64,000 bases of DNA, taken from contig NW_005434588.1 of NCBI RefSeq assembly GCF_000315625.1, forward strand, positions 62,001-126,000, read 5' to 3'. The notes beneath the pieces were generated by a model. That model was not told where the DNA came from. It worked only from the letters and a program-made list of their open reading frames with translations, and made no database searches. A program made the translations under genes and the position numbers. The stretch is from Guillardia theta CCMP2712 (taxonomy: Eukaryota; Protista; Cryptophyta). Shown piece by piece: positions 3,207 through 46,106 of the stretch (positions within the stretch are counted from its first letter, which is position 1; every line of letters starts with the position of its first letter).

Positions 3207-3479
3207 CGTCGTCTGCAATAAGCTCGCGACGCCGAATCCTCTTCCTCCTCCTCTTCCTCCTCCTCTTCCTCCTCCTCTTCCTCCTCCTCTTCCTCCTCCT
3301 CTTCCTCTATCCTCGTCTTTATCACCATCAGGAGCTCTTTCATCAAGCCTTCTCTTCTCATTAGTTAAGCTTTCGAACGACCAGTAAGTGAGACTCGAGA
3401 GTCTCTGCTGCTCAGAGAGATGAATAAAGGTTTATCTTGTCGAGTATTCTACAAGGTGAGAGCAAAGCGAGCTGCTACC

Positions 3480-4447
3480 TCAAGGGCTGCCGTTGGTTGG
3501 CTCGTACTTCCATGCCCATACTCCTGGAGTGTTCTTGTTCTGAATGCTGTTGATGATAGTCTGCACGCCCTTGCTGTACACGCTGATCTTAACGGGAGCC
3601 GACATGTTCGATCTCTCGTCTCCCCCCTTCTTACGCTGCGCCAGGTCGCTGTCGACATGTCAGGTTGAGGCTCCAAGGTCTTCATGTCTACCTGCACCAA
3701 ATCTCGTCCGAACATGTCGAGTTCTTCAACGCTACAAGCTTTCCAAACCTGAATTTTGAACTCGTTTAGGAGCTGGAGGCAAGGTGATGTCTGCAGGGAA
3801 GCGAAGAGAAAGAGGATCTAGGTGGTAGATCGTAGACATTGGTACCAGGGAACGAAGGAGGAGGATCAGGAGGAGAAGGTGGAGCAGGCGGAGGAGGAGG
3901 AGGTGGTAGTGGAGGAGGAGGAGCAGGCGGAGCAGGTGGCAAGGGTGGAGCAGGTTGGGGAGGACAAGGTGGAGCGGAGCAGGAGGAGCAGGAGGAGCAG
4001 GAGGAGAAGGCGGAGCAGGTGGCAAGGGTGGAGCGGGTGGAGCAGGTTGGGGAGGAGGAGAAGGTGGAACGGGTGGAGCAGGTTGGGGAGGAGGAGAAGG
4101 TGGAACGGGTGGAGCAGGTTGGGGAGGAGGAGAAGGTGGAGCGGGTGGAGCAGGTTGGGGAGGAGGAGAAGGTGGAGCGGAGCAGGAGGAGCAGGAGGAG
4201 CAGGTGGCGCAGGAGGCGCAGGAGGAGCATGTGGCGCAGGAGGAGCAGGAGGAGCAGGTGGCAAGGGTGGAGCGGGTGGAGCAGGTTGGGGAAGAGGAGG
4301 AGGAGCAGGAGGAGAAGCAGGAGGCGCAGGAGGAGGAGGAGCGGAGCAGCAGCAGTAGGAGGAGGAGGAGGAGCGGAGCAGGGAGGCAAGCAGACGGTCA
4401 CGAGCTTACATGGCGGCGGTCTGCTATTTCTGTCTTGGCGACCCTCA
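3480..4447 (-). CDS. Small putative 3-exon gene (~97 aa), unknown function, divergent from the Roco locus
   Basis: Reconstructed exons: MRVAKTEIADRRH | TSPCLQLLNEFKIQVWKACSVEELDMFGRDLVQ | RKKGGDERSNMSAPVKISVYSKGVQTIINSIQNKNTPGVWAWKYEPTNGSP*. Splice sites are GTAAGC/CAG and GTAGAC/CAG; the first intron is filled by the G-rich repeat at 3855-4385. Confidence 0.35.
3855..4385. repeat. G-rich minisatellite (36-bp unit AGGTGGA(A/G)CGGGTGGAGCAGGTTGGGGAGGAGGAGA, ~4 copies) embedded in (GGAGCA/GGA)n
   Basis: Tandem units visible at ~4025-4180, with partial copies at ~3940 and ~4265. Confidence 0.85.
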
Positions 4448-4654: not shown

Positions 4655-7600
4655 ATGACAGGAACAGCTACTGACGTGTGCGAGGCTGAACTCGACGCCT
4701 TGTTTCAGCATGTCAACTCTGCATACTGGAAGATGCCGTCAGTTGTGACTTGGAGCAGCAGGAGAACAGACAGGACGAAGAGACTGCGAGAGGCTTGGTG
4801 GGACGAGCTTCAGTTCCATGAGGGTTGGGCGGTCACACAAGGCCGTTGCGTTGCTCTGCCGCAAGAATGGAGCATTCAGTTCAAACTCCAAGTCCCCAGC
4901 TTGAATGGTGACATCTGTCAAATCGTCAGGTACCGACCATCTGCTGTAGAAACATCAAAACTTGAACGAGGCAACAAGGTGTTTGTGCTTGAGCCATCAA
5001 CATCGCTCAAAGAAAGTTCGAGTGACGACGTTCTGTGCAAGGAAGACAGGGACAAGAAGCGAGAAGGAGTGCTGGTTGACACATGCGGCGAGTTCAGTCT
5101 AGTAAAGATCGACGAGCAGAGACAGACATGGTACAGGACTACTTGTTTGCGTCAAACTATGAGGACAGTCAGGGGACTGGTAACTGACCACGTGCCGATC
5201 GAAGTGACAAGTACTAAACAATTTGTCAAGCCTTCACAAGCACATTTCTCTGATTCTTCTCATGACGTCGGACAGAAACTCTCTGAGAATTCAAAGCTGG
5301 TAGAGGTGGAATGGTCATCAAACATCAGAGGTTATCACAGGAAAGAAGATCTGGAGGCAGTAGAGGACGTGGAGCAGGAGATCGACTCATTGATATGTAT
5401 CCATCACGGTTTCTTGGGGTGTCGATTCAAAGGAAGGTTTTATCCGGCAGTTCCAGGAGTGAACTTGAACGATCTTGCTAGGGGGAACTATGACATTCAC
5501 GTTCGCAAGATGCAAGGCATGCTTCAGTTCATCGTTGATGACGTCATAGTCGGTATCTCCTTCTACCCAGGCCCTTGCGCTATCAGCTCATTCGGAAACG
5601 TGTATCGACTGCCATGCTTGCATTGCACACAAACACACATACAAGACGTGTGCGCTTTATGTGAATGCTGTAGCAGGGTGGGGGGAAGGAGATGCGGCAA
5701 CGCAGCTGCTCGTGACTCCAGCTGGAGTTTCTGTCATGTTCGTCTTGCCAGGCAGGCCTGCAGGTTGAAGGACATCAGGGGAGCAGAGAAGCAGCTGGGC
5801 CCTCTAGAGCTAGCACATGCCATCTATCAAACGATAAGCCAAGCTCACCCTATCGCCTTAAGTGACTTACAAGCTGAGTTGCTCGAGGACAGCAGGGCTT
5901 TTGCTGGATGCCTGCTTCAGCTACTGAAGCATCAGCCGCACGTGCTCGAGATTTTGATGGAAACAGCTCCAGAGCTTTTGCAGGGGATGGACGTAAGCAA
6001 AGAGATGAACTTCTACGGTGTCAAGGGGAGCATTGGAGCTCATTTCCTGCTGGTATCTCTGCAGTGCCGTCAGAAAAGTTTTGACACGTTGTCACGTTGT
6101 TTGGTGTGTCGGGTCGATTGGAGCGAACAGGTCAAGAGCTGTCAGAGATCAGAGGAACTTGCGACGATGATGATCCGCAATGTGTTGAAGTCGACGCCAC
6201 TACTGAACGGAGAGCAAGGGGACGTGACGTCTGAGTTCGAGTCAATGGTGGAAGAAACGATCCCATCCAGCTGGAGGGAGGGAGTCGAGTACTCCTTCGA
6301 CGCTCTAGCGATATTCTCTCATGGCGAGCTCTGCCTTGTAAGACGTTCCGACGGTTCGATTCGATTCGCAAGGGTGAGCAACGTGAGAAGTTCGATGTTG
6401 AAGGATTCTTCCTCTGCCAACTCCATCAGGTACGACTTGGACGTCAGCAAGGACGGGAAAGTCTCCAGAGACAACCAGAAACCGGGGGAACACATGGCAA
6501 AGATCCTGGCAAACCGTTCAAAGAATCACGTCACAGTGAGTGATGTAATAGCGCTGCTGCAATCAAACTCAGTCAAGATGTCTTGTGATGATTCTTTCAC
6601 CCTCGTTGAACTGCTGATGGAAGTTGAAGTTGCTGCCAGTGATGCAGTCATACCGATGCTCGAGCTGCTGCACGATATCAAGCTGAGCTCACCTCTGCTT
6701 ACATGGATCGTGTGTAGACTACTGGAGGAGGAAGAGACAAGCGCCAAATTCGGGTCTCTGAATCGCATGCTTTGCTCTATCACAAAGTTGCGATTCTCCA
6801 CTAGAAGGGAAGAGATCGTACAGCAAATCTTATCCGAGGGATTTCTCAAGAGGTTCACTATCAACATGGCTGACGCTTATCCTAAGCAGAAGGAATCTTT
6901 CTACAAGGAGAGCTGTGGTGAAGTCTTGACGCACAAGCTCATTCAGTCCTGCAGGTCATACTTGTATGACGGTTCTTCTCTTCTCCTTCCCCAGGGTGTT
7001 CAGTGGATGATGTTCCGCTGCAACCTGACCCTGTCAAGCAGAGTCAGTCACGTGCTAGTCAAAATCCTCCGCCCTTCTCCTGACTCCTCCCGTCTCAAAC
7101 GAAAGTCCTCCCCGTGGTTTCACCTCGCTTGGACCCCTCCCCGCTTCCTCCCCGCCCTCTCTCCTCGCCGATGCAGACGCCGCATGTACGAGCACGGCTT
7201 CGCCTACTGCCCCAGCAAGGGCGTCAAGTACAGCAGCGGCGGCAAGACCCCCTACGCGCAGAGGAGGCTCAAGCCCGGGGACGTGATCGCATGCTCGCTG
7301 GACTGCGAGAGGCGAGAGATCCGCTACTTGGTCAACGGGGAGGACCTGGGGGTAGCGTTCGGGGAGGAGGAGGTGACGGAGGAGGCGGTGGGGGAGGGGC
7401 TGAGGTTTACGGTGACGCTGGGGCCGGGGCAGGGGGTTGAGTTCGTGAGTACGGAGGAGGAGGAGGAGGACAAGAAGAGCAAAGGTGAAAGCTTGTTGGA
7501 GGTTTTTCAGTACGAGAGATCGATGAAGTCTTGGATACGAGTACCTCGTTCCTCTCAGCTCCTGCAGTCGTTGATCTTTGCTGCCCCTCAGCTGGACTTG

Positions 7601-10600
7601 TGCTCGCCTTGTGTAATACATCAGCCTGTGGAGGACATGCTTTCCTTTTTGTCCCTCGAAGGCCTGCAGCTTCATCTGCGAGCTAGCGGGAGAAGACTTG
7701 AGTGCCGGATAGAAGGCAAGACGGCAGTGGTTGTCAACGTCATACGACTTAAGGAACTTGCAACGTACGATGAGATTGAGCTCAACAACAGGTTCCGCTT
7801 CAAAGTGATGAAGGTCAAACATGAGATGAAAGTCATCCTGAAAGATTTCTGCCAGGCTCTAGATGTACCTTTGACACTTGACTGCCAGAGCTCCCAGCTA
7901 GACCGATGGAAAGCACTAGAGGTGTTGAAGTGCTTGAATGAGATTGAGTTTCTGTTTCAAGATCAAATCTTTCATCTCGTTGACGTTATCGTCTTTCTCT
8001 TGCTACAGCAGCAGCTCACGCTGACACAGATGGAGCAGATAGTGACTGAGATGTACGAGAGCTACAAGGACAGTCAAGGTTTCATTCCATGTAAAGTTGT
8101 GTGCGACCTGATCAAGACGCAAGGCAAGAACAAGTTCACAGCCGACAAGCTGCTCGTTGAAATGCTTTCTTTATCTTATGGCTCAGATATCAGATTAGAG
8201 ATGTCCAAGTGGAAGACGTTGAGAGAAGAAATGATTCAAGCTTTTGATGTTGACATATCAAATCCGACACAAATACTTCAAAGGATGCTGCAACCCAATC
8301 TCGACCTGACGAGTACCTGTTTGCTGAAATGCGATCGAGACATGTTTGACAGCATTGGAATGAAGCTTCTTCATCATCTCGCTACCCCAAACATCATCTA
8401 CAGCTTCGATGGCGACAGGCTGTGGCATTCTGTTTCAAACGCATATCCCTGCGTTACATATCGGGCAGGAAAGCACAGGAAGAGAGGGTTTGCCTTGTAT
8501 GCTGTCAAGGTGCTCCGAGAGACATCTGACGTCGGCAGTCGATACGATCCCTGGCTCCACCTCGCCTGGACGACACCAGCATATCACCCCAACACTCACC
8601 TGAGATGCAGACGCCGCATGTACGAGCACGGCTTCGCCTACTGCCCCAGCAAGGGCGTCAAGTACAGCAGCGGCGGCAAGACCCCCTACGCGCAGAGGAG
8701 GCTCAAGCCCGGGGACGTGATCGCATGCTCGCTGGACTGCGAGAGGCGAGAGATCCGCTACTTGGTCAACGGGGAGGACCTGGGGGTAGCGTTCGGGGAG
8801 GAGGAGGTGACGGAGGAGGCGGTGGGGGAGGGGCTGAGGTTTACGGTGACGCTGGGGCCGGGACAGGGGATCGAGTTTGTAGGAGGAAAGGAAGAAGGGA
8901 GAGAGGAGGAGGCGAGTGAGGGAGAGATCTTTCATCGCGATACCAACGAGTGGAGGAGAGTCATCAGCAAGGTAGACGACCTTAAGTTGCTCCGAGTCGC
9001 TCGGTCAGTCCTGCGATCTTTACAAGGGTCCTTGGACGTCGTAGTCTTGCAGGATGATTTCCGAGCTGGAGACTTGGTGGCAGTGAGAAACGAGATTCTG
9101 GATCCCCGATACGGGATGAGACTGCAGACAAGTTTGACATCAACGATAGGGAGAGTGAAGTCAGTTATGGGAGATGAACGAGAACAGATGAAAGGTACTA
9201 GTGACGTTCAAGTCTCAATCCTTGGCAGAGACTTCAAGTTTATCGCTCGTGAGTTGTACAGAGTGGATGCTGATGCTCGTCGAACAAGAGTGGAGAAAAG
9301 ACAGATGCTAATTCAAATGATAAACAGAAGAATCTTTGAGAGGAGAGGCGACTTGACGTTCATTGCACGTGTTGTCGAAGCTTTCTCTGACGTCGTCAGA
9401 GACAAACCTGAGATGTCTTCGATCATAGAGGCATGTTCGTGCGCTCTTGGGCAATCGGTGAGCAATCTTGATCAGTTGAATGTGCTTGCTCGCTTTCCAA
9501 TGGAGTGGAAATACCTTTCGTTATTACAGACGCTCAAGGTTGTAATGCGAACCGCATGGGCTGAGGGTCAACTAGAAAACTTGAAGAAGGCTCATCTCAA
9601 TCTCAGATGTATTTTAGAGGACGCAAAGATTTCTCAGCTCAACAATGTATCGCACATGATTGAAACATGCTTGCTGCCTTGCTTGGATTTACTTCCTTGC
9701 TGCCTAACATCGATGGGATCAAAGTTCAGCATCCATACTGAAGTAATGCTCGAGCTTGTAAGAATTGTGAACGAATTGATCCAGAAACATAATCCGCAAC
9801 ATAATGTTGCGATGTCAATGGGAAACTTAAGTTCTCTTGTTAAAATTCATCACCGATATCAAGAATTTGATAGCAACAAAAAAATGATAATTGAACAAAC
9901 TTGGGCAGACATCTTGCACAGTGCTGACTTGATAGTAAAACTCAGTGGTCCTGAGATATATCAAGGTACGCGGACACATGTGTCAGAGGATCTCTACAAA
10001 GTTGCGCTACAGATTGAAGACATGGCAGTTAGATCGATGATTCTTCTTATGCTCTACAAACATTGCTCTAACTTGAAGAGCAAGATTGTTGCTGAAGCAT
10101 TCTTCACGAGTCAATCAAGCTTGACTGATAACAGTGAGAGCAAACTACTTTTGCGACACTTGGCTGAGGACAGTACAAACTACCAGCAGGCAGACTTCTC
10201 CACGTTGACAGACGCAATCAAGCTGGCGATCAGAGCTGGGGTGGAGTTAAGTTCGCCATGGCAGATGTCAGGTGATGGAGAGGAGGCATCGACGGTAAGG
10301 CTGTCAATCTTGAGACTCGTTCTTGAGCAACAAGTCCCCGTGCTGAAGCAAACAAACAAGTTGAGAAACAGATCTCAAGACAACAACCTCATCATTCAGC
10401 CTGCTCCTGTGCTCTCCTCCGGTCGACATACCTTCCTCCTCAAGCTCCTCTCCCCCCTGCCCGCCTCCTCCCCCTCCCGTCTCTCCCCGTGGCTTCACCT
10501 CGCCTGGACCCCTCCCCGCTTCCTCCCCGCCCTCTCTCCTCGCCGATGCAGACGCCGCATGTACGAGCACGGCTTCGCCTACTGCCCCAGCAAGGGCGTC

Positions 10601-13462
10601 AAGTACAGCAGCGGCGGCAAGACCCCCTACGCGCAGAGGAGGCTCAAGCCCGGGGACGTGATCGCATGCTCGCTGGACTGCGAGAGGCGAGAGATCCGCT
10701 ACTTGGTCAACGGGGAGGACCTGGGGGTAGCGTTCGGGGAGGAGGAGGTGACGGAGGAGGCGTTGGGGGAGGGGCTGAGGTTTACGGTGACGCTGGGGCC
10801 GGGGCAGGGGGTCGAGCTTGTGAAGGTGACCAGATTTGCAGGCTCGGAGGAGGAGGAGGAGGAGAAGAGGGTTGAGGACCTTTCGTGGGAATATCTTGAA
10901 ATTCGATGTCAGACGTGCAACAACCTCTGGTGGAGCGAGCAAAACCTTGTTGAAAGCATTCAGCTCCTGCTGACTCATTTGAATATCGAGAATGTCATAC
11001 TTCCTCGTCCTCACGATTCAAACGTCCAGACGCAAGACTATAATCTCAAACTACTTTGTTTGAATTCTTCTGTTTGCTTAAACACACATCAGACAAGAAG
11101 GGCAAAAGGAAGTTTGACAGACGCGAAGAGACTAAGTGAGCCCTCAGGGATGTTTGAGATTGTGAAAGTCATCTTAGAGCTGATCAGAGCTTCTTCTTGC
11201 GACTCCAGTTCCTTCCAAAGTCTGTGCGTTTCCGTTCTTGCGATGATCGAACAAGAGGCTTGTACAATGTCACATTGCTTGTCAATCTTACAAGAACTCT
11301 ATGATGTTTGCTTTGGCTACAGCACGAACACTGACAACAATGTACATTCGTTTACCTCACAAGAATTAAGTTTTGAATGTTATCAATGCTCTCAATTGTT
11401 GTTGACCAAACGATGCGTTTATTGCCAGCAATGTCATCAATGCTGCATAACAGCAACTTGCAAACAACACTCACGGAGGTTCAAATCCGACAAACATGAA
11501 ATTCTCCTGTCGGAGATGTTCAAGCTACGCACGATAAAGACAAGCAATTGCATGAACTTGAAAGCAAGCATGGTAGAATATGCTTTCAGGTCATGTTATG
11601 CTAAGCCCAATAGCATATTGAGAGACAACATCGATGTGATATGCTGCATGTTGGGGTACGGGGGTAAAGGAGGTCAAGCCATCTCTCAACTCTGTGCAGC
11701 CTTGTCAACGCATCCAGATCTGATCAATACTCGAATAGCACGAGCAGGGCAGAGAGAAGCTTCGACAACGACTCTTGCAATGCGCATCCTTGAGGCATTG
11801 TTCAGAGACAGGAGCTGCCGCTATGACCGCACAAGTCTTCTCAACCTCTCCTCAACCTCCTCCTTGACCGCCCGAACAAGTCAGACCCTCTCCTCCGGTC
11901 GACATACCTTCCTCCTCAAGCTCCTCTCCCCCCTGCCCGCCTCCTCCCCCTCCCGTCTCTCCCCGTGGCTTCACCTCGCCTGGACCCCTCCCCGCTTCCT
12001 CCCCGCCCTCTCTCCTCGCCGATGCAGACGCCGCATGTACGAGCACGGCTTCGCCTACTGCCCCAGCAAGGGCGTCAAGTACAGCAGCGGCGGCAAGACC
12101 CCCTACGCGCAGAGGAGGCTCAAGCCCGGGGACGTGATCGCATGCTCGCTGGACTGCGAGAGGCGAGAGATCCGCTACTTGGTCAACGGGGAGGACCTGG
12201 GGGTAGCGTTCGGGGAGGAGGAGGTGACGGAGGAGGCGGTGGGGGAGGGGCTGAGGTTTACGGTGACGCTGGGGCCGGGGCAGGGGGTCAAGCTTGTAAA
12301 GGCGGAGGAGGAGGAGGAGGAGAGTGAGGGTCGAGAACGAGCATGGGAGATGTTAAGCTTTTACTATGAGGGAGAATGGTGTTATCTGAGAGCCCTTGAC
12401 CTTGAACTGCTATCGTTCGCTCATGTCATAGTCAGGCTTCTTGTAAACAACTCTCAATCTCAAGGCCTTGAGGTATTGAGACTGATGGGTGAAAACTCTT
12501 CTTTCTTGCTGTACGGCTCCAACTCAAAGGAGTTTCAGATGACAGGATCGCTCATTGATACGCTCTTAGATGAAAAAGTTTTGAGTTCGACATGTCTTAG
12601 TCATACCAAAGAAGTGACGGTTGTCGAGGAGTTGATCCAAAACCTTGAGGAGGTTGTCGGACAAGGGCTGAAGCCATGGATACAACTGATCGCTCACAAA
12701 CTTGTGAGGTACTGCTCTGAAACTCTTGATCAAACATTCAAACTTCGCTTTTTATCTTGCTTGATTCCTGCTTTTGTCAAAAACGGTCTTTTGCAATCTA
12801 TTGCCCCTGAGGTTTCAAGCAACGTCAGGGAGTCAAAGTGCGATGACAACCAACCATATCCAATCAAATACATCATACGCGTACTGACAGACTACCAGCA
12901 ACTTGCCTCTTGTCGTCACAGTCCGACTGGTTTCAAGTTACTCCATGTCTTGTTCAGGTCACTGGAATCATCCTATGAGATTTTCAAGCATTCAGACGGG
13001 CTGATTGTGCAAGGGCTGCCCTATCATTCCAAATCCATTCGATGTCAATCAACTCTTGAATCAGGCCGACATACCTTCCTCCTCAAGCTCCTCGCCCCCC
13101 TGCCCGCCTCCTCCCCCTCCCGTCTCTCCCCGTGGCTTCACCTCGCTTGGACCCCTCCCCGCTTCCTCCCCGCCCTCTCTCCTCGCCGATGCAGACGCCG
13201 CATGTACGAGCACGGCTTCGCCTACTGCCCCAGCAAGGGCGTCAAGTACAGCAGCGGCGGCAAGACCCCCTACGCGCAGAGGAGGCTCAAGCCCGGGGAC
13301 GTGATCGCATGCTCGCTGGACTGCGAGAGGCGAGAGATCCGCTACTTGGTCAACGGGGAGGACCTGGGGGTAGCGTTCGGGGAGGAGGAGGTGACGGAGG
13401 AGGCGGTGGGGGAGGGGCTGAGGTTTACGGTGACGCTGGGGCCGGGGCAGGGGTCGAGTTGA
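4655..13462 (+). CDS. N-terminal part of a giant Roco protein: five B30.2/SPRY-like domains, a Mib/HERC2 (KEG-type) SH3-like repeat and Cys-rich segments
   Basis: 2935-codon uninterrupted ORF with 5x 'GFAYCPSKGVKY..LKPGDVIACSLDCERREIRYLVNGEDLGVAF' (classic SPRY C-terminal signature GDVIGCxLD..NG..LGVAF). 'FRAGDLVAVRNEILDPRYG..TIGRVKSV' lies at ~9058-9170, and Cys/His clusters at ~5615-5700 and ~11378-11500. Confidence 0.85.
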   Translation: MTGTATDVCEAELDALFQHVNSAYWKMPSVVTWSSRRTDRTKRLREAWWDELQFHEGWAVTQGRCVALPQEWSIQFKLQVPSLNGDICQIVRYRPSAVETSKLERGNKVFVLEPSTSLKESSSDDVLCKEDRDKKREGVLVDTCGEFSLVKIDEQRQTWYRTTCLRQTMRTVRGLVTDHVPIEVTSTKQFVKPSQAHFSDSSHDVGQKLSENSKLVEVEWSSNIRGYHRKEDLEAVEDVEQEIDSLICIHHGFLGCRFKGRFYPAVPGVNLNDLARGNYDIHVRKMQGMLQFIVDDVIVGISFYPGPCAISSFGNVYRLPCLHCTQTHIQDVCALCECCSRVGGRRCGNAAARDSSWSFCHVRLARQACRLKDIRGAEKQLGPLELAHAIYQTISQAHPIALSDLQAELLEDSRAFAGCLLQLLKHQPHVLEILMETAPELLQGMDVSKEMNFYGVKGSIGAHFLLVSLQCRQKSFDTLSRCLVCRVDWSEQVKSCQRSEELATMMIRNVLKSTPLLNGEQGDVTSEFESMVEETIPSSWREGVEYSFDALAIFSHGELCLVRRSDGSIRFARVSNVRSSMLKDSSSANSIRYDLDVSKDGKVSRDNQKPGEHMAKILANRSKNHVTVSDVIALLQSNSVKMSCDDSFTLVELLMEVEVAASDAVIPMLELLHDIKLSSPLLTWIVCRLLEEEETSAKFGSLNRMLCSITKLRFSTRREEIVQQILSEGFLKRFTINMADAYPKQKESFYKESCGEVLTHKLIQSCRSYLYDGSSLLLPQGVQWMMFRCNLTLSSRVSHVLVKILRPSPDSSRLKRKSSPWFHLAWTPPRFLPALSPRRCRRRMYEHGFAYCPSKGVKYSSGGKTPYAQRRLKPGDVIACSLDCERREIRYLVNGEDLGVAFGEEEVTEEAVGEGLRFTVTLGPGQGVEFVSTEEEEEDKKSKGESLLEVFQYERSMKSWIRVPRSSQLLQSLIFAAPQLDLCSPCVIHQPVEDMLSFLSLEGLQLHLRASGRRLECRIEGKTAVVVNVIRLKELATYDEIELNNRFRFKVMKVKHEMKVILKDFCQALDVPLTLDCQSSQLDRWKALEVLKCLNEIEFLFQDQIFHLVDVIVFLLLQQQLTLTQMEQIVTEMYESYKDSQGFIPCKVVCDLIKTQGKNKFTADKLLVEMLSLSYGSDIRLEMSKWKTLREEMIQAFDVDISNPTQILQRMLQPNLDLTSTCLLKCDRDMFDSIGMKLLHHLATPNIIYSFDGDRLWHSVSNAYPCVTYRAGKHRKRGFALYAVKVLRETSDVGSRYDPWLHLAWTTPAYHPNTHLRCRRRMYEHGFAYCPSKGVKYSSGGKTPYAQRRLKPGDVIACSLDCERREIRYLVNGEDLGVAFGEEEVTEEAVGEGLRFTVTLGPGQGIEFVGGKEEGREEEASEGEIFHRDTNEWRRVISKVDDLKLLRVARSVLRSLQGSLDVVVLQDDFRAGDLVAVRNEILDPRYGMRLQTSLTSTIGRVKSVMGDEREQMKGTSDVQVSILGRDFKFIARELYRVDADARRTRVEKRQMLIQMINRRIFERRGDLTFIARVVEAFSDVVRDKPEMSSIIEACSCALGQSVSNLDQLNVLARFPMEWKYLSLLQTLKVVMRTAWAEGQLENLKKAHLNLRCILEDAKISQLNNVSHMIETCLLPCLDLLPCCLTSMGSKFSIHTEVMLELVRIVNELIQKHNPQHNVAMSMGNLSSLVKIHHRYQEFDSNKKMIIEQTWADILHSADLIVKLSGPEIYQGTRTHVSEDLYKVALQIEDMAVRSMILLMLYKHCSNLKSKIVAEAFFTSQSSLTDNSESKLLLRHLAEDSTNYQQADFSTLTDAIKLAIRAGVELSSPWQMSGDGEEASTVRLSILRLVLEQQVPVLKQTNKLRNRSQDNNLIIQPAPVLSSGRHTFLLKLLSPLPASSPSRLSPWLHLAWTPPRFLPALSPRRCRRRMYEHGFAYCPSKGVKYSSGGKTPYAQRRLKPGDVIACSLDCERREIRYLVNGEDLGVAFGEEEVTEEALGEGLRFTVTLGPGQGVELVKVTRFAGSEEEEEEKRVEDLSWEYLEIRCQTCNNLWWSEQNLVESIQLLLTHLNIENVILPRPHDSNVQTQDYNLKLLCLNSSVCLNTHQTRRAKGSLTDAKRLSEPSGMFEIVKVILELIRASSCDSSSFQSLCVSVLAMIEQEACTMSHCLSILQELYDVCFGYSTNTDNNVHSFTSQELSFECYQCSQLLLTKRCVYCQQCHQCCITATCKQHSRRFKSDKHEILLSEMFKLRTIKTSNCMNLKASMVEYAFRSCYAKPNSILRDNIDVICCMLGYGGKGGQAISQLCAALSTHPDLINTRIARAGQREASTTTLAMRILEALFRDRSCRYDRTSLLNLSSTSSLTARTSQTLSSGRHTFLLKLLSPLPASSPSRLSPWLHLAWTPPRFLPALSPRRCRRRMYEHGFAYCPSKGVKYSSGGKTPYAQRRLKPGDVIACSLDCERREIRYLVNGEDLGVAFGEEEVTEEAVGEGLRFTVTLGPGQGVKLVKAEEEEEESEGRERAWEMLSFYYEGEWCYLRALDLELLSFAHVIVRLLVNNSQSQGLEVLRLMGENSSFLLYGSNSKEFQMTGSLIDTLLDEKVLSSTCLSHTKEVTVVEELIQNLEEVVGQGLKPWIQLIAHKLVRYCSETLDQTFKLRFLSCLIPAFVKNGLLQSIAPEVSSNVRESKCDDNQPYPIKYIIRVLTDYQQLASCRHSPTGFKLLHVLFRSLESSYEIFKHSDGLIVQGLPYHSKSIRCQSTLESGRHTFLLKLLAPLPASSPSRLSPWLHLAWTPPRFLPALSPRRCRRRMYEHGFAYCPSKGVKYSSGGKTPYAQRRLKPGDVIACSLDCERREIRYLVNGEDLGVAFGEEEVTEEAVGEGLRFTVTLGPGQGSS
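7109..7440 (+). repeat. SPRY cassette copy 1
   Basis: Near-identical nucleotide sequence to copies 2-5. Confidence 0.95.
8550..8875 (+). repeat. SPRY cassette copy 2 (identical core starts ~8604)
   Basis: Near-identical core with a diverged 5' part. Confidence 0.95.
10412..10821 (+). repeat. SPRY cassette copy 3
   Basis: About 410 bp shared with copy 4; private V>L SNP (GCGTTG vs GCGGTG). Confidence 0.95.
11888..12297 (+). repeat. SPRY cassette copy 4
   Basis: About 410 bp shared with copy 3. Confidence 0.95.
13067..13458 (+). repeat. SPRY cassette copy 5 (1-nt deletion at 3' end)
   Basis: Near-identical to copies 3/4; reads CAGGGGTC versus CAGGGGGTC in those copies. Confidence 0.95.
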
Positions 13463-16400
13463 GAAATTCTGGAGAAGCTTTGGAGGACGCCGGGTACGAA
13501 TGTGTTGTGATAGGATCAGAGAGCGAGAGATGGTTTGCTTGCTCTAGTCAATATGAACATGCCAAGTCACTTTTGAGTTGGCTCATGCAGCAACGTTCAC
13601 AACAATCTTCAGATGACTTGTCAAGAAACCTTAAATGTTGCGTCTCTGATTTCATGCTCGACGATCAGGTTGGACTCAGTTTCAAACAAAACTTTCAGAA
13701 GTTTTTCTTTGAACTTGAGTTTGAGGCAGCAGAAGCAACGATGATGATAGAATCAAGGAGCAGCATCTTCAAGGCTTCTGAAGTTTGTCTTCCTCTCATT
13801 CCTTCATTGTACATTCACATGTGGTATGCAAACAAGATATCCCAACTCTCTCTCGTTCGCATTCAGCTCAGCGATATTCCAGCAGAGATATCTATACTCA
13901 GACTGCAAAGCCTCGACGTGTCTGAGAATCGTCTTAATCACCTTTCTCCGTCATTGTGTTTGGTGGTCACTCTCGAGATTTTGAGGTGTAACAACAACTT
14001 CTTGTCGATTCTCCCGGACGACATCGGGCTGCTTGTCAATCTTATCAAGCTAGAAGCAGCTCAGAACGCCCTGTCCTCCCTTCCTGACTCGCTCTTCTCT
14101 CTTGCTCGCCTTGAGGACCTCGACATCAGTGGCCCACCCTTGCCGAGAGAAAGGCTGTGCAGAAACTCAACAGCTGAGCTCGAGCTGGACAGCTTCCTCG
14201 GGTTCTTCCGTGAGGTTTCTTGCTGGGAGGAGATCGTTGGACGGTCGGAGCAGGAGGAGATGTTCTACCGACATGCGCAGGAGGGAGTGGTAGCGAGGGA
14301 GAGGCTCGTTGACTTAGAGGAAGAGATGCTGCACAAGTATTGGAGGTACAAGGGACGGAGACACGAGTCGTTCTCCTTCGATCCAGCCATCCTGACCATG
14401 CGGTCGTTGAGGCGCCTGAGCATGAGGAATGTTGGCATTCAAGGTAGGCTCCTGATACCTCGCCACGTCACCACGGGGAGCCTGGAGGAGGTGGACCTTT
14501 CGTACAATCAGATCAGCGATGTGAGTTTGACCTCTCAGTCTCTGCGGGGCCTCAAGCGCTTCTGCTTGGAGGGCAACCGGCTGCTCATCCCCGAGGAGGT
14601 GAAGAAGCGCGGAGAAGCTTCAGTCTTGAACTTCTTGAGGGGAAGGGCGGAAGCGAGTCAAGAGTCCTTCAAGCTGATGCTGTTCCTGCACGGGCTGGGA
14701 GGCGTCGGAAAGACTTGCCTGCTCGCGGCGCTCAAAGGCAAAGAGTTTGACCCCGACGGCGAAATGACGGACGGCATTGAGATCTCTTCTTGGAAGGTTA
14801 GGGTGGAGGAGGAGGAGGTCCAGTACCTCAAGCAAGCCTTGACCGAGAGCCAGCAGAATCAGGTCAGCCAGAGGCTCAGTCGCAAGCGCATCGAGGACTT
14901 GATGGGGGTCGAGATCGAGTTTGTGGTGCATGACTTTGCGGGACAGGAGGTCTACTACAACTCTCATCAACTCTTCCTTCACAACCGAGCTCTCGAGCTC
15001 GTCCTCTGGGACGTCCGGCGAGGGTTTGACAACAGCGGAGTTTGCTTCTGGCTGAACAACATCAAGACCTGCGCTCCAAGAGCTGCGATCATCATCGTGG
15101 GGACTAAGACAGATGAGATGGATACGCCGCCTCTGGACCTGCACGCGCTCTCTCAAAAGTTCCCTCAGGTCAAGGCATTTCACGCTGTGAGCTCGAAGAC
15201 GATGCGAGGGGTGGAGGACCTGAGGCGCCTGCTAGTCAAGCAGGCCCTGCTGGAGGAGCACGTGGGGCAGAGCATACCTCACAAGTGGTCGATCCTGGAA
15301 GACATCATCGTGCAAGAGGCAAGGTCGAGCAAGACTGGCTACGTTCGCTTCCCGACCCTCAGAGAGTGGGCCAGGTTGAGCGCCTTCAGCTCCGACGACG
15401 CCATCGAGGACGCTGCCGATTTCCTGCATGACATCGGGACGATCGTGAGGTTCTCAGACGAGGACGCGAGGCTGACGGGGCTGGACGACGTTGTCATCAC
15501 AGACAAGCAGTGGCTGGCTGACGTCATGAGCAGCATCATCACCTCCAAGTCTAGAGTTCACGTCCTGTCGCACGCAGACCTGTCCAGCATGTGGCAGGCG
15601 TTTCCCCCTGACGTTCATAGCAACCTCATCGACCTGCTCAAGAAGTTCGACCTGCTGGTGGAGACTGACAGTCGGAGCTTCCTCGTTCCCTGCCTCCTCC
15701 CCCTTGGCGCCCCTAGAGGAGAAGACCTTGAAGCTTTCACCCTCATCCCGGGAGAGCGGCTCTCCCTGTCCTACCGCACCTTCGCGCTCTCCTTCTGCCC
15801 CTACGGCTTCTTCAACCTCCTCCAGGCTCGTCTGCGTGACTTGGACGCCAGCAGGTTCCCCTGGTGCCGCGTCGGGATGTGGCGGAACGGCATGCCCATC
15901 GCGTCGTCCTACCATTCTCGAGGAGTTGTCATACTGCACCAAGAGGAAAACAAGGTTGAATGTACTTTCTCGGGAGAAGGAAAGGACAACTTGATCAGCG
16001 TGGTATCAGAGAGTATCTTCATCCTGCTCACCGATAAGTATCAGGTCACCTACGACGTCTTCTTGCCATGCCAAGGCTGCTTGGACGTCTGCCCTCGCGC
16101 TCCTCACATGTTTTCAAGCAACGTCACTCTCAAACGAGCCATGCAGAAGCATCAGATCTTCTTGCAGTGCCACAAGGAGTTTCACAACATCCCGGTCGCT
16201 CACTACCTGGCAGCCATGCCCCATTCGTCGCGAGTTTCTCAAGAGCAGCTGAGCTCAGTGCTGGAGGGCATCGGCTTGTGGAAGGCAACACACAGGGCGC
16301 ACGTGTACTTGAGCTATGCTCGAGGGGACGAGGAAGCGTTGCGAGCAGGTCTGCGGGTCAAGGCTCTCCTCCTAGAGCAGCTCATCGACGTCTGGTTCCC

Positions 16401-18159
16401 AACCCATGACTCGCCGGATGCCGTGAGAGCCAACGAGCTGGCCTTGTCCTCTGCTACCATCGTCATCGCCCTCATCACCAAGCGGTACTGCCTCCCGCAC
16501 GGGCTCGGGCTCAAGGAAATTCAGTACGCGGTGGAAGTCAAACCCAAGCCCGTCATCCCGGTGGTGGTGGAGGACGAGAGCCCGTCGTTTCCTCTCGCCT
16601 GGATGACTAGCTCTGTCGGGCTCCACCTGTGCGGCCTGCTGTACGTCGACCTGAGGGCGCGGGACGAGGAGCAATTTTCACTCGTTGCTCGAAGAACACA
16701 AGCGCTGCTGGCTGCTTCTGGAGTCAGAGGTGGCAGGAGCAGCGAGCACTTCGACTTCATGATCAGCTACAGCTGGTCCAACTGCGACAACGGGGAGGAG
16801 GCAGGGGAGGAGGGCGATACGAGGAGGGAGTTCTGGAGCCCCCGGCGGATCAAACGAGCGCTAGAGGAGAGCGCAGGGTCAGGCAAGCAGCTGCGAGGCT
16901 GGATCGATGTGGAGCAGCTGGGCAACCGACCAAGAGAGGGGCTGTATGAGGGGATACGACGAGGGCTGACTGAGTCTCAAGTGCTGGTAGTATGCATGAG
17001 TAACGAGTATGCCATGAGCAGGAACTGCAGCATGGAGTGCAGATATGCTCTGCTGCTCAACAAACCTGTCCTGCTAGCCCTTGTAGGAAGTGATGACAAC
17101 TCTCCCTTGCCTCCTGCCTGGAAGTCAACTGAGACTGGACTGTTGACAAGCCACCTTTGGTCTGAGATTAGCAAACAGGAAGAGCTGTTCTTTGACTTCA
17201 GGAGGGTGCGGAGCAAGTCACAGTTTGATGCGATCATATCGAGTTTGAAGAGAAAGATTGAAGAGATGCAACGGAACGACCAGGAAGCAAGTGAAACGCG
17301 AGCAGGTCAAGAGACGTCACCCACGACTATCGATCTGTCAGATTCAGTGGAGGAGCAGATGAAGTTTGGGAGGAGGATGGCTATTCAGTTCTTTCGCAGT
17401 CACTCTTCCTTCGGGTCTACCTTTCCCGTCCTCTGGGTCATCCAGTGGCAGCCGAAGGCTCAAGACACCCTCACAGCCTTCGACGCGTGGGAGGACAACG
17501 ACTACTTCTTGCGCCCTGTCTCTGAGACCCCCGACGCATGGGTGCTCGTGCCTCGTGCTCGGTTCAGGATTGACGACGCGCGTCATCGCATCAAGAGCTT
17601 GTCTTCCCTGCTCTTCCTCGTGGTCCGATGCCTTGCTGTCCTCCAACAAGGCGTCCTGTGCTCTCTCAGCAAGGTTGAAGACTCCAAGGGCGAGACTTCG
17701 GCGATGAAGAAGTTCCTGCGGTACGAGGAGTTGGAGGTTTTCCTTGAGGGCAGCAGCAAGGGAATGGTCGGGAGGGCAGAAGCGATTAGAGAGTCTCTTC
17801 AGCTGATCCACAACCTCGTCAAGAGCGACGACTCGTGGAGCTCGAGCTCGTCTGAGCTCAAACTCGAGGTCTTGCCGAGCAAAGAAGTCTTCTGGAGCTT
17901 TTGGAGCAAAGACCTTGTCCGAGATACAATCGATGCAGACTGGTTGGTCGAGTGGACGAGGCGATCTAACCAACTGGAGGAGGGAGGGAGGAGGAGCAGG
18001 CCGAGGGGCGTCACTTTGGATGAGCAAGTCATGATGGCAGAGACCTCAGTCGTACCATCAGATGTCACTGATGATCAGTCGAACATCAAGAGATTGAAGC
18101 AGATTCTTTCACGACAAGAGCTCTTGCTCAGTAAGTTCCCTCAGACTAGCATCAAGTGA
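13453..18159 (+). CDS. C-terminal part of the giant Roco protein: LRR-ROC GTPase-COR-TIR-TIR (continues the upstream ORF after a 1-nt frameshift)
   Basis: LRRs (LQSLDVSENRL, LEEVDLSYNQI). ROC motifs GLGGVGKT (14692-14715), TDGIEI, DFAGQEVYY, IVGTKTD, VSSKT. COR 'QWLADVMSSII..LIDLLKKFDL'. TIR-like 'HVYLSYAR' (~16300) and 'FDFMISYSWSN..WIDVEQL..SNEYAMSRNCSME' (~16750-17040). Confidence 0.9.
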   Translation, partial: VELRNSGEALEDAGYECVVIGSESERWFACSSQYEHAKSLLSWLMQQRSQQSSDDLSRNLKCCVSDFMLDDQVGLSFKQNFQKFFFELEFEAAEATMMIESRSSIFKASEVCLPLIPSLYIHMWYANKISQLSLVRIQLSDIPAEISILRLQSLDVSENRLNHLSPSLCLVVTLEILRCNNNFLSILPDDIGLLVNLIKLEAAQNALSSLPDSLFSLARLEDLDISGPPLPRERLCRNSTAELELDSFLGFFREVSCWEEIVGRSEQEEMFYRHAQEGVVARERLVDLEEEMLHKYWRYKGRRHESFSFDPAILTMRSLRRLSMRNVGIQGRLLIPRHVTTGSLEEVDLSYNQISDVSLTSQSLRGLKRFCLEGNRLLIPEEVKKRGEASVLNFLRGRAEASQESFKLMLFLHGLGGVGKTCLLAALKGKEFDPDGEMTDGIEISSWKVRVEEEEVQYLKQALTESQQNQVSQRLSRKRIEDLMGVEIEFVVHDFAGQEVYYNSHQLFLHNRALELVLWDVRRGFDNSGVCFWLNNIKTCAPRAAIIIVGTKTDEMDTPPLDLHALSQKFPQVKAFHAVSSKTMRGVEDLRRLLVKQALLEEHVGQSIPHKWSILEDIIVQEARSSKTGYVRFPTLREWARLSAFSSDDAIEDAADFLHDIGTIVRFSDEDARLTGLDDVVITDKQWLADVMSSIITSKSRVHVLSHADLSSMWQAFPPDVHSNLIDLLKKFDLLVETDSRSFLVPCLLPLGAPRGEDLEAFTLIPGERLSLSYRTFALSFCPYGFFNLLQARLRDLDASRFPWCRVGMWRNGMPIASSYHSRGVVILHQEENKVECTFSGEGKDNLISVVSESIFILLTDKYQVTYDVFLPCQGCLDVCPRAPHMFSSNVTLKRAMQKHQIFLQCHKEFHNIPVAHYLAAMPHSSRVSQEQLSSVLEGIGLWKATHRAHVYLSYARGDEEALRAGLRVKALLLEQLIDVWFPTHDSPDAVRANELALSSATIVIALITKRYCLPHGLGLKEIQYAVEVKPKPVIPVVVEDESPSFPLAWMTSSVGLHLCGLLYVDLRARDEEQFSLVARRTQALLAASGVRGGRSSEHFDFMISYSWSNCDNGEEAGEEGDTRREFWSPRRIKRALEESAGSGKQLRGWIDVEQLGNRPREGLYEGIRRGLTESQVLVVCMSNEYAMSRNCSMECRYALLLNKPVLLALVGSDDNSPLPPAWKSTETGLLTSHLWSEISKQEELFFDFRRVRSKSQFDAIISSLKRKIEEMQRNDQEASETRAGQETSPTTIDLSDSVEEQMKFGRRMAIQFFRSHSSFGSTFPVLWVIQWQPKAQDTLTAFDAWEDNDYFLRPVSETPDAWVLVPRARFRIDDARHRIKSLSSLLFLVVRCLAVLQQGVLCSLSKVEDSKGETSAMKKFLRYEELEVFLEGSSKGMVGRAEAIRESLQLIHNLVKSDDSWSSSSSELKLEVLPSKEVFWSFWSKDLVRDTIDADWLVEWTRRSNQLEEGGRRSRPRGVTLDEQVMMAETSVVPSDVTDDQSNIKRLKQILSRQELLLSKFPQTSIK

Positions 18160-22557: not shown

Positions 22558-30950
<8,393 letters not shown>

Positions 30951-41385: not shown

Positions 41386-45173
<3,788 letters not shown>

Positions 45174-45974
45174 NNNNNNNNNNNNNNNNNNNNNNNNNNN
45201 NNNNNNNNNNNNNNNNNNNNNNNNNNNNNNNNNNNNNNNNNNNNNNNNNNNNNNNNNNNNNNNNNNNNNNNNNNNNNNNNNNNNNNNNNNNNNNNNNNNN
45301 NNNNNNNNNNNNNNNNNNNNNNNNNNNNNNNNNNNNNNNNNNNNNNNNNNNNNNNNNNNNNNNNNNNNNNNNNNNNNNNNNNNNNNNNNNNNNNNNNNNN
45401 NNNNNNNNNNNNNNNNNNNNNNNNNNNNNNNNNNNNNNNNNNNNNNNNNNNNNNNNNNNNNNNNNNNNNNNNNNNNNNNNNNNNNNNNNNNNNNNNNNNN
45501 NNNNNNNNNNNNNNNNNNNNNNNNNNNNNNNNNNNNNNNNNNNNNNNNNNNNNNNNNNNNNNNNNNNNNNNNNNNNNNNNNNNNNNNNNNNNNNNNNNNN
45601 NNNNNNNNNNNNNNNNNNNNNNNNNNNNNNNNNNNNNNNNNNNNNNNNNNNNNNNNNNNNNNNNNNNNNNNNNNNNNNNNNNNNNNNNNNNNNNNNNNNN
45701 NNNNNNNNNNNNNNNNNNNNNNNNNNNNNNNNNNNNNNNNNNNNNNNNNNNNNNNNNNNNNNNNNNNNNNNNNNNNNNNNNNNNNNNNNNNNNNNNNNNN
45801 NNNNNNNNNNNNNNNNNNNNNNNNNNNNNNNNNNNNNNNNNNNNNNNNNNNNNNNNNNNNNNNNNNNNNNNNNNNNNNNNNNNNNNNNNNNNNNNNNNNN
45901 NNNNNNNNNNNNNNNNNNNNNNNNNNNNNNNNNNNNNNNNNNNNNNNNNNNNNNNNNNNNNNNNNNNNNNNNNN
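45174..45974. other. Assembly gap (other gaps at ~43905-44005 and ~48642-48871)
   Basis: Runs of N, each adjacent to simple repeats. Confidence 1.
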
Positions 45975-46106
45975 NGAGGAGAGGAGAGGAGAGGAGAGGA
46001 GAGGAGAGGAGAGGAGACGAGACGAGATGAGACGAGATGAGACGAGACGAGAAGGGAAGGGAAGGGAAGGTAATGAATTGGATGAGATGAGTTGAGATGA
46101 GTTGAG

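What the first reader, a model, noticed from the sequence alone, without database searches (positions are those of the whole stretch)
7109..13458. Five SPRY cassettes nearly identical at DNA level inside unrelated spacers: active homogenisation or a mobile coding cassette
Seen: 270-410 bp copies match even at synonymous sites, while the 0.8-1.5 kb spacers show no obvious similarity. All copies end at nearly the same 3' point, but their 5' limits differ (10412/11888, 13067, 7109, 8604). SNPs are patchwork: copy 5 shares GCTTGG with copy 1 but TGGCTT with copies 3/4. The N-terminal SPRY strands and the acidic-linker+Trp flanks are present but diverged in each copy, and the cassettes are visibly more GC-rich than the spacers. 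Inference: old domain duplicates repeatedly overwritten by polar gene-conversion tracts, giving a constant core with variable N-terminal strands. The direct repeats could also recombine in frame to delete or duplicate whole modules, a receptor-diversifying mechanism.
Basis: partly seen in the sequence, partly recalled or inferred. Interest (0 to 1): 0.9.

Follow-up and report, generated by a model that had tools for sequence, protein, structure and literature searches.

The report
Five SPRY cores homogenised by conversion
Inside one giant receptor-like gene of the alga Guillardia theta, the central part of five old SPRY domain copies is kept letter-for-letter identical by copying between the copies (gene conversion); this is a clean new example of a known process, not a mobile element or a new mechanism.

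Summary
The window is Guillardia theta CCMP2712 nuclear DNA. One intronless 8.8-kb ORF carries five SPRY domains separated by 0.8-1.5 kb of mutually unrelated coding spacer.

- **Repeat:** a 259-bp core is identical in all five copies, apart from two private SNPs and one G-run length difference. Identity extends 5' to staggered points (tracts of 319, 383 and 402 bp), then falls to 25-57%. The flanks still encode the remaining SPRY strands.
- **Not mobile, not an artefact:** the cassette occurs nowhere else in the 87-Mb genome. Contig break-points in three sequencing runs reproduce the junctions.
- **Cross-species test:** Hanusia phi transcripts orthologous to spacer+SPRY-1 and spacer+SPRY-2 keep copy-specific residues where the G. 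theta copies are identical.
- **Reading:** intragenic gene conversion of old duplicates. GC3 is 0.89-0.92 in tracts, 0.44-0.58 in spacers and 0.70-0.77 in the ROCO half, which suggests GC-biased conversion (inferred).
- **Diversifying role:** unsupported, because most of the domain is homogenised.
- **Frameshift:** an independent run has the missing G in copy 5, so the gene probably continues into LRR-Roc-COR-TIR-TIR (about 4,500 aa).

An unchecked note of this scan (s1-434855) reports something similar elsewhere in this genome.

The parts
4655..13462 (+). ORF1, 2,935 aa, intronless: N-terminal region followed by five [spacer + SPRY] modules. It ends 'GPGQGSS*' because copy 5 has a G-run one base shorter than copies 1, 3 and 4.
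   Evidence: the N-terminus aligns with the Hanusia phi P0002 N-terminus
7007..7462 (+). SPRY domain 1 (approximate extent). Its N-terminal strands (about 7007-7118) are copy-specific, 50-52% identical to c3-c5 in DNA.
7119..7437 (+). Conversion tract of copy 1 (319 bp). 0 mismatches to c5 over 313 bp; 1-2 mismatches to c3/c4.
8447..8896 (+). SPRY domain 2 (approximate extent). Its N-terminal strands (about 8447-8603) are copy-specific and orthologous to Hanusia P0003 (26/50 aa, against 17/50 to its own paralogues).
8604..8862 (+). Conversion tract of copy 2, which is also the 259-bp core shared by all five copies. Private G>A at 8863 and G>A at 8870 just beyond.
10412..10813 (+). Conversion tract of copy 3 (402 bp, 1 mismatch to c4: private G>T at A1 column 528). 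The whole SPRY domain is about 10388-10837.
11888..12289 (+). Conversion tract of copy 4 (402 bp).
13067..13449 (+). Conversion tract of copy 5 (383 bp, 2-3 mismatches to c3/c4, none to c1 from 13137).
13438..13453 (+). G-run cluster GGGGCCGGGGCAGGGG at the 3' edge of copy 5. The last run has 4 G, against 5 in c1, c3 and c4. An independent run (X1) has a contig with one more G here, joined to copy 5's own 3' flank.
13450..18159 (+). Continuation frame (-1 relative to ORF1): 'GVELRNSGE...' acidic linker + Trp as after the other copies, then LRR, Roc, COR-A, COR-B, two TIR domains and a C-terminal region.

Best explanation
The five SPRY domains are ancient internal duplicates within one giant ROCO-type gene of Guillardia theta. 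The gene reads N-terminal region, 5 x [unique spacer + SPRY], then very probably LRR-Roc-COR-TIR-TIR.

Repeated non-reciprocal copying between the copies (intragenic ectopic gene conversion, i.e. concerted evolution) has overwritten the central and C-terminal beta-strands of every copy with one sequence. At least four events with different 5' end-points are needed:
- 402 bp between c3 and c4
- 383 bp into or from c5
- 319 bp for c1
- 259 bp for c2

The first strands, the last strand, the acidic linker and the spacers stay copy-specific.

GC3 is near saturation only inside the tracts. This is most simply the footprint of long-running GC-biased repair of conversion heteroduplexes (gBGC).

What is shown: the tract anatomy, uniqueness in the genome, independent support for the assembly, the age of the modules, and species-specific homogenisation at protein level.

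What is inferred: gBGC as the cause of the GC3 rise, whether the process is still running, and the functional consequence. That consequence would be five equivalent SPRY binding units on a variable scaffold, i.e. multivalency rather than diversity.
For: - **Step-like identity profile:** 1.00 in the core, 0.25-0.57 on the 5' side, 0.57-0.74 on the 3' side, with nested 5' boundaries.
- **Partial-domain tracts:** Pfam finds 5 SPRY domains. The AF2 model (pLDDT 82) matches RyR SPRY2, DDX1 and RanBP10 SPRY over about 150 columns. The all-copy core covers only model residues 60-149, so strands before and after it are encoded by the diverged flanks.
- **Unique to this gene:** cassette DNA and protein hit only these five places in the 87-Mb genome.
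- **Spacers unrelated:** blastp E > 2.
- **Modules predate the Guillardia/Hanusia split:** Hanusia phi transcripts are P0002 (N-terminal region + start of SPRY-1, 30% identity over 850 aa) and P0003 (spacer 1 + start of SPRY-2, 41%).
- **Incongruent similarity across species:** outside the core, Gt c2 is closer to Hp P0003 (26/50) than to its own paralogues (17/50). Inside the core, the Gt paralogues are 17/17, Gt-Hp pairs are 11-14/17 and Hp paralogues are 10-14/17.
- **Hanusia contigs break at one residue:** all three stop at '...SKG[V/L]', as expected where a repeat starts.
- **Independent runs reproduce the assembly:** X1 (2021), X2 (2011) and X6 (2023) show the c1 and c3/c4 flanks as loose ends at 13067, 13126 and 13453. 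X1 and X2 also break at the c2 boundary (13188) and give an unbranched core contig at about 3x flank depth.
- **GC3:** tracts 0.89-0.92 (sliding windows up to 0.97), diverged 5' SPRY parts of c1/c2 0.63-0.66, spacers 0.44-0.58, ROCO half 0.70-0.77.
Against: - No nucleotide sequence of the Hanusia cores could be obtained, so the cross-species test rests on 17 in-core residues plus the contig break-points.
- gBGC has not been demonstrated for the G. theta nuclear genome. The one survey that includes G. theta analysed only 3 chromosomes at 26% GC (its nucleomorph, by my knowledge) and found no significant signal. I could not polarise substitutions.
- k-mer depth of the core is about 3x the flanks, not 5x. 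GC bias is plausible but unproven.
- No RNA evidence for the gene in G. theta. About 13 probable-RNA assemblies of the species label hold almost none of its words, and the one raw RNA run gave 0 reads from the 6% sampled.
- The shared sharp 3' edge is not explained by homology loss alone.
Confidence: 0.8

Rival explanations
1. A directed or adaptive recombination device. Conversion would be initiated at a fixed site at the 3' edge (the G-run cluster), and/or the in-frame direct repeats would be used to delete, duplicate or reorder whole modules. This would vary the architecture of an immune-type receptor between clones, as happens with fungal NLR repeats.
For: - Common 3' edge within 10 nt in all copies, exactly at GGGGCCGGGGCAGGGGG.
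- 7 of the 9 canonical minus-strand G4 motifs of the 64-kb window lie in the cassettes.
- All copies are in frame.
- Hanusia has two spacer-1-like fragments and G. theta has one.
- The ROCO-TIR architecture resembles that of immune receptors.
Against: - No recombinant junction or copy-number variant was seen, though 31-mer contigs cannot span a 259-bp repeat.
- The G4 motifs may simply follow from the C-rich Pro/Ser-coding sequence.
- The cassette folds no better than shuffled sequence (z = -0.99).
- The two Hanusia fragments may belong to two genes.
Confidence: 0.08
2. A mobile coding cassette (a transposable or homing element carrying a SPRY piece) inserted five times.
For: Sharp 3' boundary and strong GC contrast with the surroundings.
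Against: - Four different 5' ends.
- No copy anywhere else in 87 Mb.
- The cassette is only part of a domain, and each local flank supplies the rest in diverged form.
- A1 shows no shared terminal repeats or duplicated target sites.
- Hanusia has the SPRY domains at the same positions.
Confidence: 0.03
3. An assembly artefact: similar but non-identical copies collapsed to one consensus, or a mis-joined repeat.
For: Repeats are a classic source of collapse. Core k-mer depth is about 3x rather than 5x.
Against: - Each copy sits in its own unique, open reading frame-preserving flanks.
- Contigs of three runs from three studies (2011, 2021, 2023) reproduce the boundaries and the column-269 T/C variant, and give an unbranched 256-bp core.
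- The tracts (259-402 bp) are short enough to be spanned by single long capillary reads (my estimate; the sequencing method was not verified here).
Confidence: 0.03
4. No exchange at all: extreme purifying selection on the nucleotide sequence itself (an embedded RNA or DNA element) has frozen all five copies since duplication.
For: None specific. Synonymous sites are invariant.
Against: - Hanusia orthologues differ from G. theta and from each other inside the core.
- No exceptional secondary structure.
- The nested tract lengths and near-saturated GC3 are not expected under plain constraint.
Confidence: 0.02
5. Very recent duplication of whole modules, followed by ultra-fast divergence of the spacers.
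For: c3 and c4 remain 85-91% alike for about 60 nt beyond the 3' edge.
Against: - The spacers share no detectable similarity, while 70 four-fold sites per copy are unchanged.
- Modules 1 and 2 already existed, with their own spacers, before the Guillardia/Hanusia split.
Confidence: 0.01

Closest known systems
Fungal NLR (NACHT/NB-ARC) WD, ANK and TPR repeats with 'high internal conservation' (Podospora nwd/het-e/het-d; PMC1805685, PMC4986451, PMC12222747)
   Same: The sensor repeats of a large NTPase-type, cell-death-linked receptor are kept nearly identical at DNA level by concerted evolution within the gene.
   Different: In fungi the repeats are short and strictly tandem. They exchange between genes as well, show repeat-number polymorphism, and show positive selection at ligand-contact positions. 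Here the units are parts of about 150-aa SPRY domains dispersed among 0.8-1.5 kb unrelated spacers in a single gene. No copy-number polymorphism or positive selection has been shown.
Brown-algal ROCO genes with shuffled LRR exons (Ectocarpus; PMC3341825, PMC11378527)
   Same: Algal LRR-Roc-COR candidate immune receptors whose repeated sensor units recombine.
   Different: In brown algae each LRR is a separate exon, and shuffling and alternative splicing create diversity. Here the gene is intronless, the recombining unit is a SPRY core, and the outcome is uniformity.
Intragenic homogenisation of spidroin repeats (Argiope AcSp1, MaSp; PMC3933166, PMC3563967, PMC9779670)
   Same: About 200-aa coding repeats inside one very long exon are kept almost identical, including at synonymous sites (as I recall these papers; one search returned only titles and abstract openings).
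   Different: The spidroin repeats are tandem arrays of whole repeats without unrelated spacers.
Ryanodine-receptor SPRY2 and other SPRY-only domains (4p9j, 4xw3, 5jia)
   Same: Same fold (Foldseek E about 4e-9; phmmer E 2e-4). By my own knowledge, RyR likewise has several SPRY domains scattered through a giant helical scaffold.
   Different: RyR SPRY1-3 are diverged from one another (own knowledge). There is no Roc-COR or TIR context.
GC-biased gene conversion (survey in PMC5635611)
   Same: GC enrichment confined to the DNA that undergoes conversion.
   Different: gBGC is usually inferred from allelic, meiotic recombination landscapes. Here it would act on ectopic intragenic tracts. It was not detected for G. 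theta in that survey, which analysed only 3 chromosomes at 26% GC.

Membership tests
SPRY domain (PF00622) | Match to the family profile above the curated cut-off | tested here: met
   E 1.2e-62, 209.8 bits against a cut-off of 26.3, five stretches
SPRY domain (PF00622) | Complete beta-sandwich fold | tested here: met
   AF2 model with pLDDT 82 and pTM 0.79. Foldseek best hits are RyR1/2 SPRY2, DDX1, RanBP9/10, Ash2L and HERC1 SPRY, with 138-170 aligned columns
ROCO proteins | Roc GTPase immediately followed by COR | tested here: met
   Roc, COR-A and COR-B all score above their cut-offs in the frame that continues from copy 5, preceded by LRR and followed by 2 TIR. Continuity with the SPRY part depends on one G, which is present in run X1
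Concerted evolution by gene conversion | Paralogues within a species more alike than orthologues between species, in the converted segment only | tested here: met
   Protein level, 17 in-core residues: Gt paralogues 17/17, Gt-Hp pairs 11-14/17, Hp paralogues 10-14/17. Outside the core the orthologue wins (26/50 against 17/50). A DNA-level test was not possible.
Concerted evolution by gene conversion | Discrete tracts with abrupt boundaries inside older, diverged homology | tested here: met
   Identity 1.00 against 0.25-0.57 (5') and 0.57-0.74 (3'); four nested 5' boundaries
Concerted evolution by gene conversion | Mosaic distribution of variants (phylogenetic incompatibility) | tested here: inconclusive
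   Only 4 variable sites inside the tracts. c5 matches c3/c4 upstream and c1 at column 269, but all four haplotypes are not present
GC-biased gene conversion | GC at silent sites raised specifically in converted DNA | tested here: met
   GC3 0.89-0.92 in tracts, 0.63-0.66 in the unconverted SPRY parts of c1/c2, 0.44-0.58 in spacers, 0.70-0.77 in the ROCO half
GC-biased gene conversion | Excess of AT>GC over GC>AT fixed changes, polarised with an outgroup | not testable with these tools
   No outgroup nucleotide sequence. Hanusia fragments are protein only and stop at the core
Mobile element / homing cassette | Fixed ends, and copies at unrelated sites | tested here: not met
   Staggered 5' ends; only five hits in the genome, all in this ORF
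Fungal-NLR-type high-internal-conservation repeats | Tandem array of whole repeat units | tested here: not met
   Units are 1.2-1.9 kb apart with unrelated spacers
Fungal-NLR-type high-internal-conservation repeats | Repeat-number polymorphism and positive selection at binding positions | not testable with these tools
   Needs several isolates or long reads. Only contigs of what appears to be one strain were available

The most novel reading that the evidence does not exclude
The cassettes would be the working parts of a built-in recombination device in an algal immune-type receptor. Conversion would start at the G-run cluster that marks the common 3' edge. The in-frame 259-402-bp direct repeats would let clones delete, duplicate or reorder whole sensor modules. 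This would be a dispersed-repeat counterpart of the fungal NLR repeat system, in a ROCO-TIR protein.
Probability: 0.08. Interest if true: 0.75.

Novelty: new member of a known kind. Interest (0 to 1): 0.4.

Why it matters
- **Clear natural example of sub-domain gene conversion.** The same protein domain, in one reading frame, is split into a homogenised part and copy-specific parts. Silent-site GC goes from about 0.5 to about 0.9 at the tract borders.
- **A handle on GC-biased conversion in cryptophytes.** The only survey I found that covers G. theta analysed 3 chromosomes at 26% GC and found no signal.
- **A correction to the public annotation.** The public gene model covers only the last third of the gene and invents introns. 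The real product is probably a protein of about 4,500 aa: 5xSPRY-LRR-Roc-COR-TIR-TIR.
- **A functional hint.** The receptor would carry five equivalent SPRY units rather than five different ones.

Tried and rejected
- **Hairpin or cruciform between the C-rich 5' half and the G-rich 3' half.** The DNA fold gives -96 kcal/mol against -91.7 +/- 4.4 for shuffles (z = -0.99), so nothing special.
- **Synonymous C-to-G switch as a sign of a central break site.** The switch is real: four-fold sites are C39/G2 on the left and C5/G24 on the right, p = 9e-12. But a weaker form of the same neighbour-dependence occurs in the ROCO half and in an unrelated ORF (rho 0.22-0.24, p about 1e-5). It needs no special mechanism, and I leave it as unexplained detail.
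- **Canonical plus-strand G4 at the 3' edge.** A strict-loop search found none. The canonical motifs are on the minus strand in the 5' half.
- **Recovering the Hanusia core.** A word-indexed search with the 85-aa core found nothing of 47-149 aa. A search with spacer 3 + SPRY-4 start found nothing. An exact look-up of P0003 found no contig, and P0006 has no DNA on file.
- **RNA support in G. theta.** The raw RNA run gave 0 reads from a 6% sample, so it is no test. About 13 probable-RNA assemblies hold almost none of the gene's words.
- **Naming the spacers.** Atlas feature hits all score below 0.8 (Cul7; ConA-like/armadillo solenoid), so they are leads only.
- **Literature.** No paper on G. theta SPRY cassettes turned up.
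Full report
**Where we are.** The only database relative of the big ORF is a partial gene model, GUITHDRAFT_115574 of Guillardia theta CCMP2712. The window is contig 86 of an 87.1-Mb, 669-contig assembly, which fits the cryptophyte nuclear genome as I know it from Curtis et al. 2012. That paper is not in the searchable library.

**The observation.**
- A single ORF (4655-13462, 2,935 aa) spans the whole finding. It carries five Pfam SPRY matches (E 1.2e-62).
- The repeat finder returns one five-copy direct family, in register at 7037, 8471, 10412, 11888 and 13055. All spacings are multiples of three.
- In alignment A1, a 259-bp block (c2 8604-8862) is identical in all five copies except a private G>T in c3.
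- Identity extends further 5' in a nested way: c1 from 7119 (319 bp), c5 from 13067 (383 bp), c3 and c4 from 10412/11888 (402 bp, one mismatch).
- Beyond the tracts identity falls at once, to 0.25-0.57 on the 5' side and 0.57-0.74 on the 3' side.
- The 3' ends of the identical block lie within ten columns of each other, at the G-run cluster GGGGCCGGGGCAGGGGG.
- The four spacers, the N-terminal region and the stretch after copy 5 show no mutual similarity. blastp gives E > 2, and blastn finds only GAG-rich linker matches.
- GC is 0.62-0.70 in the cassettes and 0.35-0.50 between them.

The 'patchwork' of SNPs rests on only four variable sites and is weak on its own.

**Is the assembly right?** I laid contigs of three DNA runs from three studies (2011, 2021, 2023) on copy 5 alone.
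- Their 31-mer contigs break exactly where the assembly says other copies diverge: 13067 (c3/c4 upstream sequence as a loose end), 13126 (c1 upstream), 13188 (the c2 boundary, in X1 and X2) and 13453 (c1 downstream).
- All three runs carry the column-269 T/C variant.
- X1 and X2 give an unbranched core contig.
- Core depth is 2.2-3.4 times the flank depth. That is multi-copy and not more than five, but lower than the expected five. GC bias is a plausible cause, which I could not prove.
- Short contigs cannot exclude rare variants or structural isoforms.

**What the cassettes are part of.**
- An AlphaFold model of module 3, built on a small alignment, has pLDDT 82. It superposes on RyR SPRY2, DDX1, RanBP9/10, Ash2L and HERC1 SPRY domains over about 150 columns. 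phmmer also finds RyR1 SPRY2.
- The fold spans model residues 8-157. The all-copy core covers only residues 60-149.
- The first two or three strands and the last strand are therefore encoded by the diverged flanks, which align between copies at protein level.
- After every copy comes an acidic linker and a Trp-containing segment.

Each cassette is therefore the middle of an old, complete SPRY domain and not a self-contained insert.

**Donors and mobility.** Cassette DNA and cassette protein each hit only these five places in the genome. With staggered 5' ends and no shared terminal features, a mobile-element origin is rejected.

**Comparative test.** An exhaustive phmmer search with residues 1-1200 found only 28 hits in 1.84 billion representatives. 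The best are transcriptome proteins of Hanusia phi, a cryptophyte (by my knowledge the sister genus of Guillardia):
- P0002: N-terminal region plus the start of SPRY-1, 30% identity over 850 aa.
- P0003: spacer 1 plus the start of SPRY-2, 41% identity.
- P0004: an N-terminal piece.
- P0011: a second spacer-1-like fragment.

The module architecture therefore predates the split of the two genera, and the gene is transcribed in Hanusia.

- Outside the G. theta core, copy 2 is closer to its orthologue P0003 (26/50, including a shared one-residue deletion) than to its own paralogues (17/50).
- Inside the core, the G. theta paralogues are 17/17, Guillardia-Hanusia pairs are 11-14/17, and the Hanusia paralogues are 10-14/17.
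- This switch from orthology to within-species identity is the signature of concerted evolution.
- All three Hanusia contigs stop at the same residue, '...SKG[V/L]'. I read this as the assembler meeting a repeat, so Hanusia probably has its own homogenised core starting a little further 3'. That is an inference, and I could not obtain the Hanusia core itself.

**GC content.**
- GC3 is 0.89-0.92 over the tracts, and up to 0.97 in 40-codon windows.
- It is 0.63-0.66 in the unconverted SPRY parts of c1 and c2, 0.44-0.58 in the spacers and N-terminal region, and 0.70-0.77 in the LRR-Roc-COR-TIR half.
- A single recent copying event cannot create about 40 extra GC-ending codons.
- Either the sequence was GC-rich before it spread, or long-running exchange with GC-biased mismatch repair enriched it. 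With no GC-rich donor in the genome, I favour the second. This stays an inference.
- The only survey I found that includes G. theta analysed 3 chromosomes at 26% GC (its nucleomorph, by my knowledge) and saw no significant signal.

**Details that remain unexplained.**
- Third positions switch from C-ending to G-ending at about 10631 (four-fold sites C39/G2 against C5/G24, p = 9e-12). A milder neighbour-dependence of the same kind exists elsewhere in the gene and in a neighbouring ORF. It may be a general context effect, amplified where GC3 is near saturation.
- The C-rich and G-rich halves do not form an unusually stable hairpin (z = -0.99).
- Seven of the nine canonical minus-strand G4 motifs of the window lie in the cassettes. 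This may simply follow from the Pro/Ser-rich coding sequence.
- The common 3' edge may reflect an initiation or termination site, selection on the last strand, or the indel-rich acidic linker acting as a barrier. I cannot tell which.

**The frameshift.**
- Copy 5 has four G where c1, c3 and c4 have five. This ends ORF1 with 'GPGQGSS*'.
- The -1 frame continues 'GVELRNSGE...' and runs 4.7 kb through LRR, Roc, COR-A, COR-B and two TIR domains.
- In run X1, a 5.4-kb contig at single-copy depth joins the cassette end to copy 5's own flank with one extra G. Only 20 nt lie on its left side, so this is good but not final evidence.
- The gene is then a single reading frame of about 4,500 codons. The public model P0001 starts inside copy 4 and jumps the frameshift with invented introns.

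**Function.**
- The domain order (sensor-like repeats, LRR, Roc-COR switch, TIR output) resembles candidate immune receptors. Examples are brown-algal ROCOs (PMC3341825, PMC11378527) and fungal NLRs, whose repeats also evolve in concert (PMC1805685, PMC4986451).
- In those systems the exchange creates diversity in tandem repeats. Here it makes five dispersed domains alike.
- My best guess, which is inference only, is a multivalent array of equivalent SPRY binding units held on rapidly evolving spacers. The spacers are only 30-41% identical between sister genera.
- No expression was detected for G. theta in public RNA assemblies, and the raw RNA run was not informative.

**Verdict.** The mechanism is intragenic gene conversion of old duplicates (confidence about 0.8). 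The GC-biased component is likely but unproven. The mobile-cassette and artefact readings are rejected, and the diversifying role is unsupported. This is a new and instructive member of a known kind. A similar, unchecked note exists for another contig of this genome (s1-434855).

Noticed in passing
window 13438-13453 (and ORF2 frame 13450-18159): The one-base G shortage that splits the gene is absent from an independent 2021 DNA run. A single-copy-depth contig carries an extra G behind 13449 and runs on into copy 5's own flank. The break is therefore probably a reference error or a culture-specific mutation, and the gene has about 4,500 codons.
   Followed up: partly
window 12035-18159; protein P0001: The public model GUITHDRAFT_115574 (1,825 aa) starts at the Met inside SPRY copy 4, skips part of spacer 4 and jumps the frameshift with invented introns. 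The first two-thirds of the gene (about 7.4 kb of open frame) have no matching model among the proteins that my length-limited search could see (1,614-5,136 aa).
   Followed up: partly
window 10412-10813 (same in the other copies): Silent sites switch from C-ending to G-ending codons in the middle of the cassette (Gly is GGC four times, then GGG nine times). A weaker neighbour-dependent effect of the same sign occurs in other coding DNA of the window.
   Followed up: partly
window 7134-7157, 10460-10532, 11936-12008, 13103-13175 (minus strand): Seven of the nine canonical minus-strand G-quadruplex motifs in the 64-kb window fall in the C-rich 5' halves of the cassettes.
   Followed up: no
Hanusia phi proteins P0003 and P0011 against window 7625-8659: Hanusia has two different spacer-1-like fragments (41% and 29% identical to the single G. 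theta spacer 1), each ending in a SPRY start. This means either a second gene or an extra module in Hanusia.
   Followed up: partly
window 12400-14400: Four freshwater or lake metagenome runs (X7-X10) hold 5-25% of the sampled 31-mers of this stretch, which is odd for what I know as a marine alga.
   Followed up: no
window 6300-6480 and 9080-9290 (ORF1 residues about 550-610 and about 1480-1545): A short motif of the type 'F..GE.CLV.RSDGS.RF..V' in the N-terminal region matches a repeated small domain in metagenomic protein P0014. Spacer 2 has a similar 'F..GDLVAV' stretch and a weak Cul7/CPH-like Atlas hit (score 0.75). The spacers may hide small SH3-like domains.
   Followed up: no
window 3216-3334, 3836-4400, 25844-26105, 43570-43800, 48260-48440: Long trinucleotide (GAG/GGA/TCC/TCG) coding-type microsatellites are very frequent in this window. 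Assembly gaps (runs of N) lie at 43906-44005, 45174-45975 and 48642-48871.
   Followed up: no
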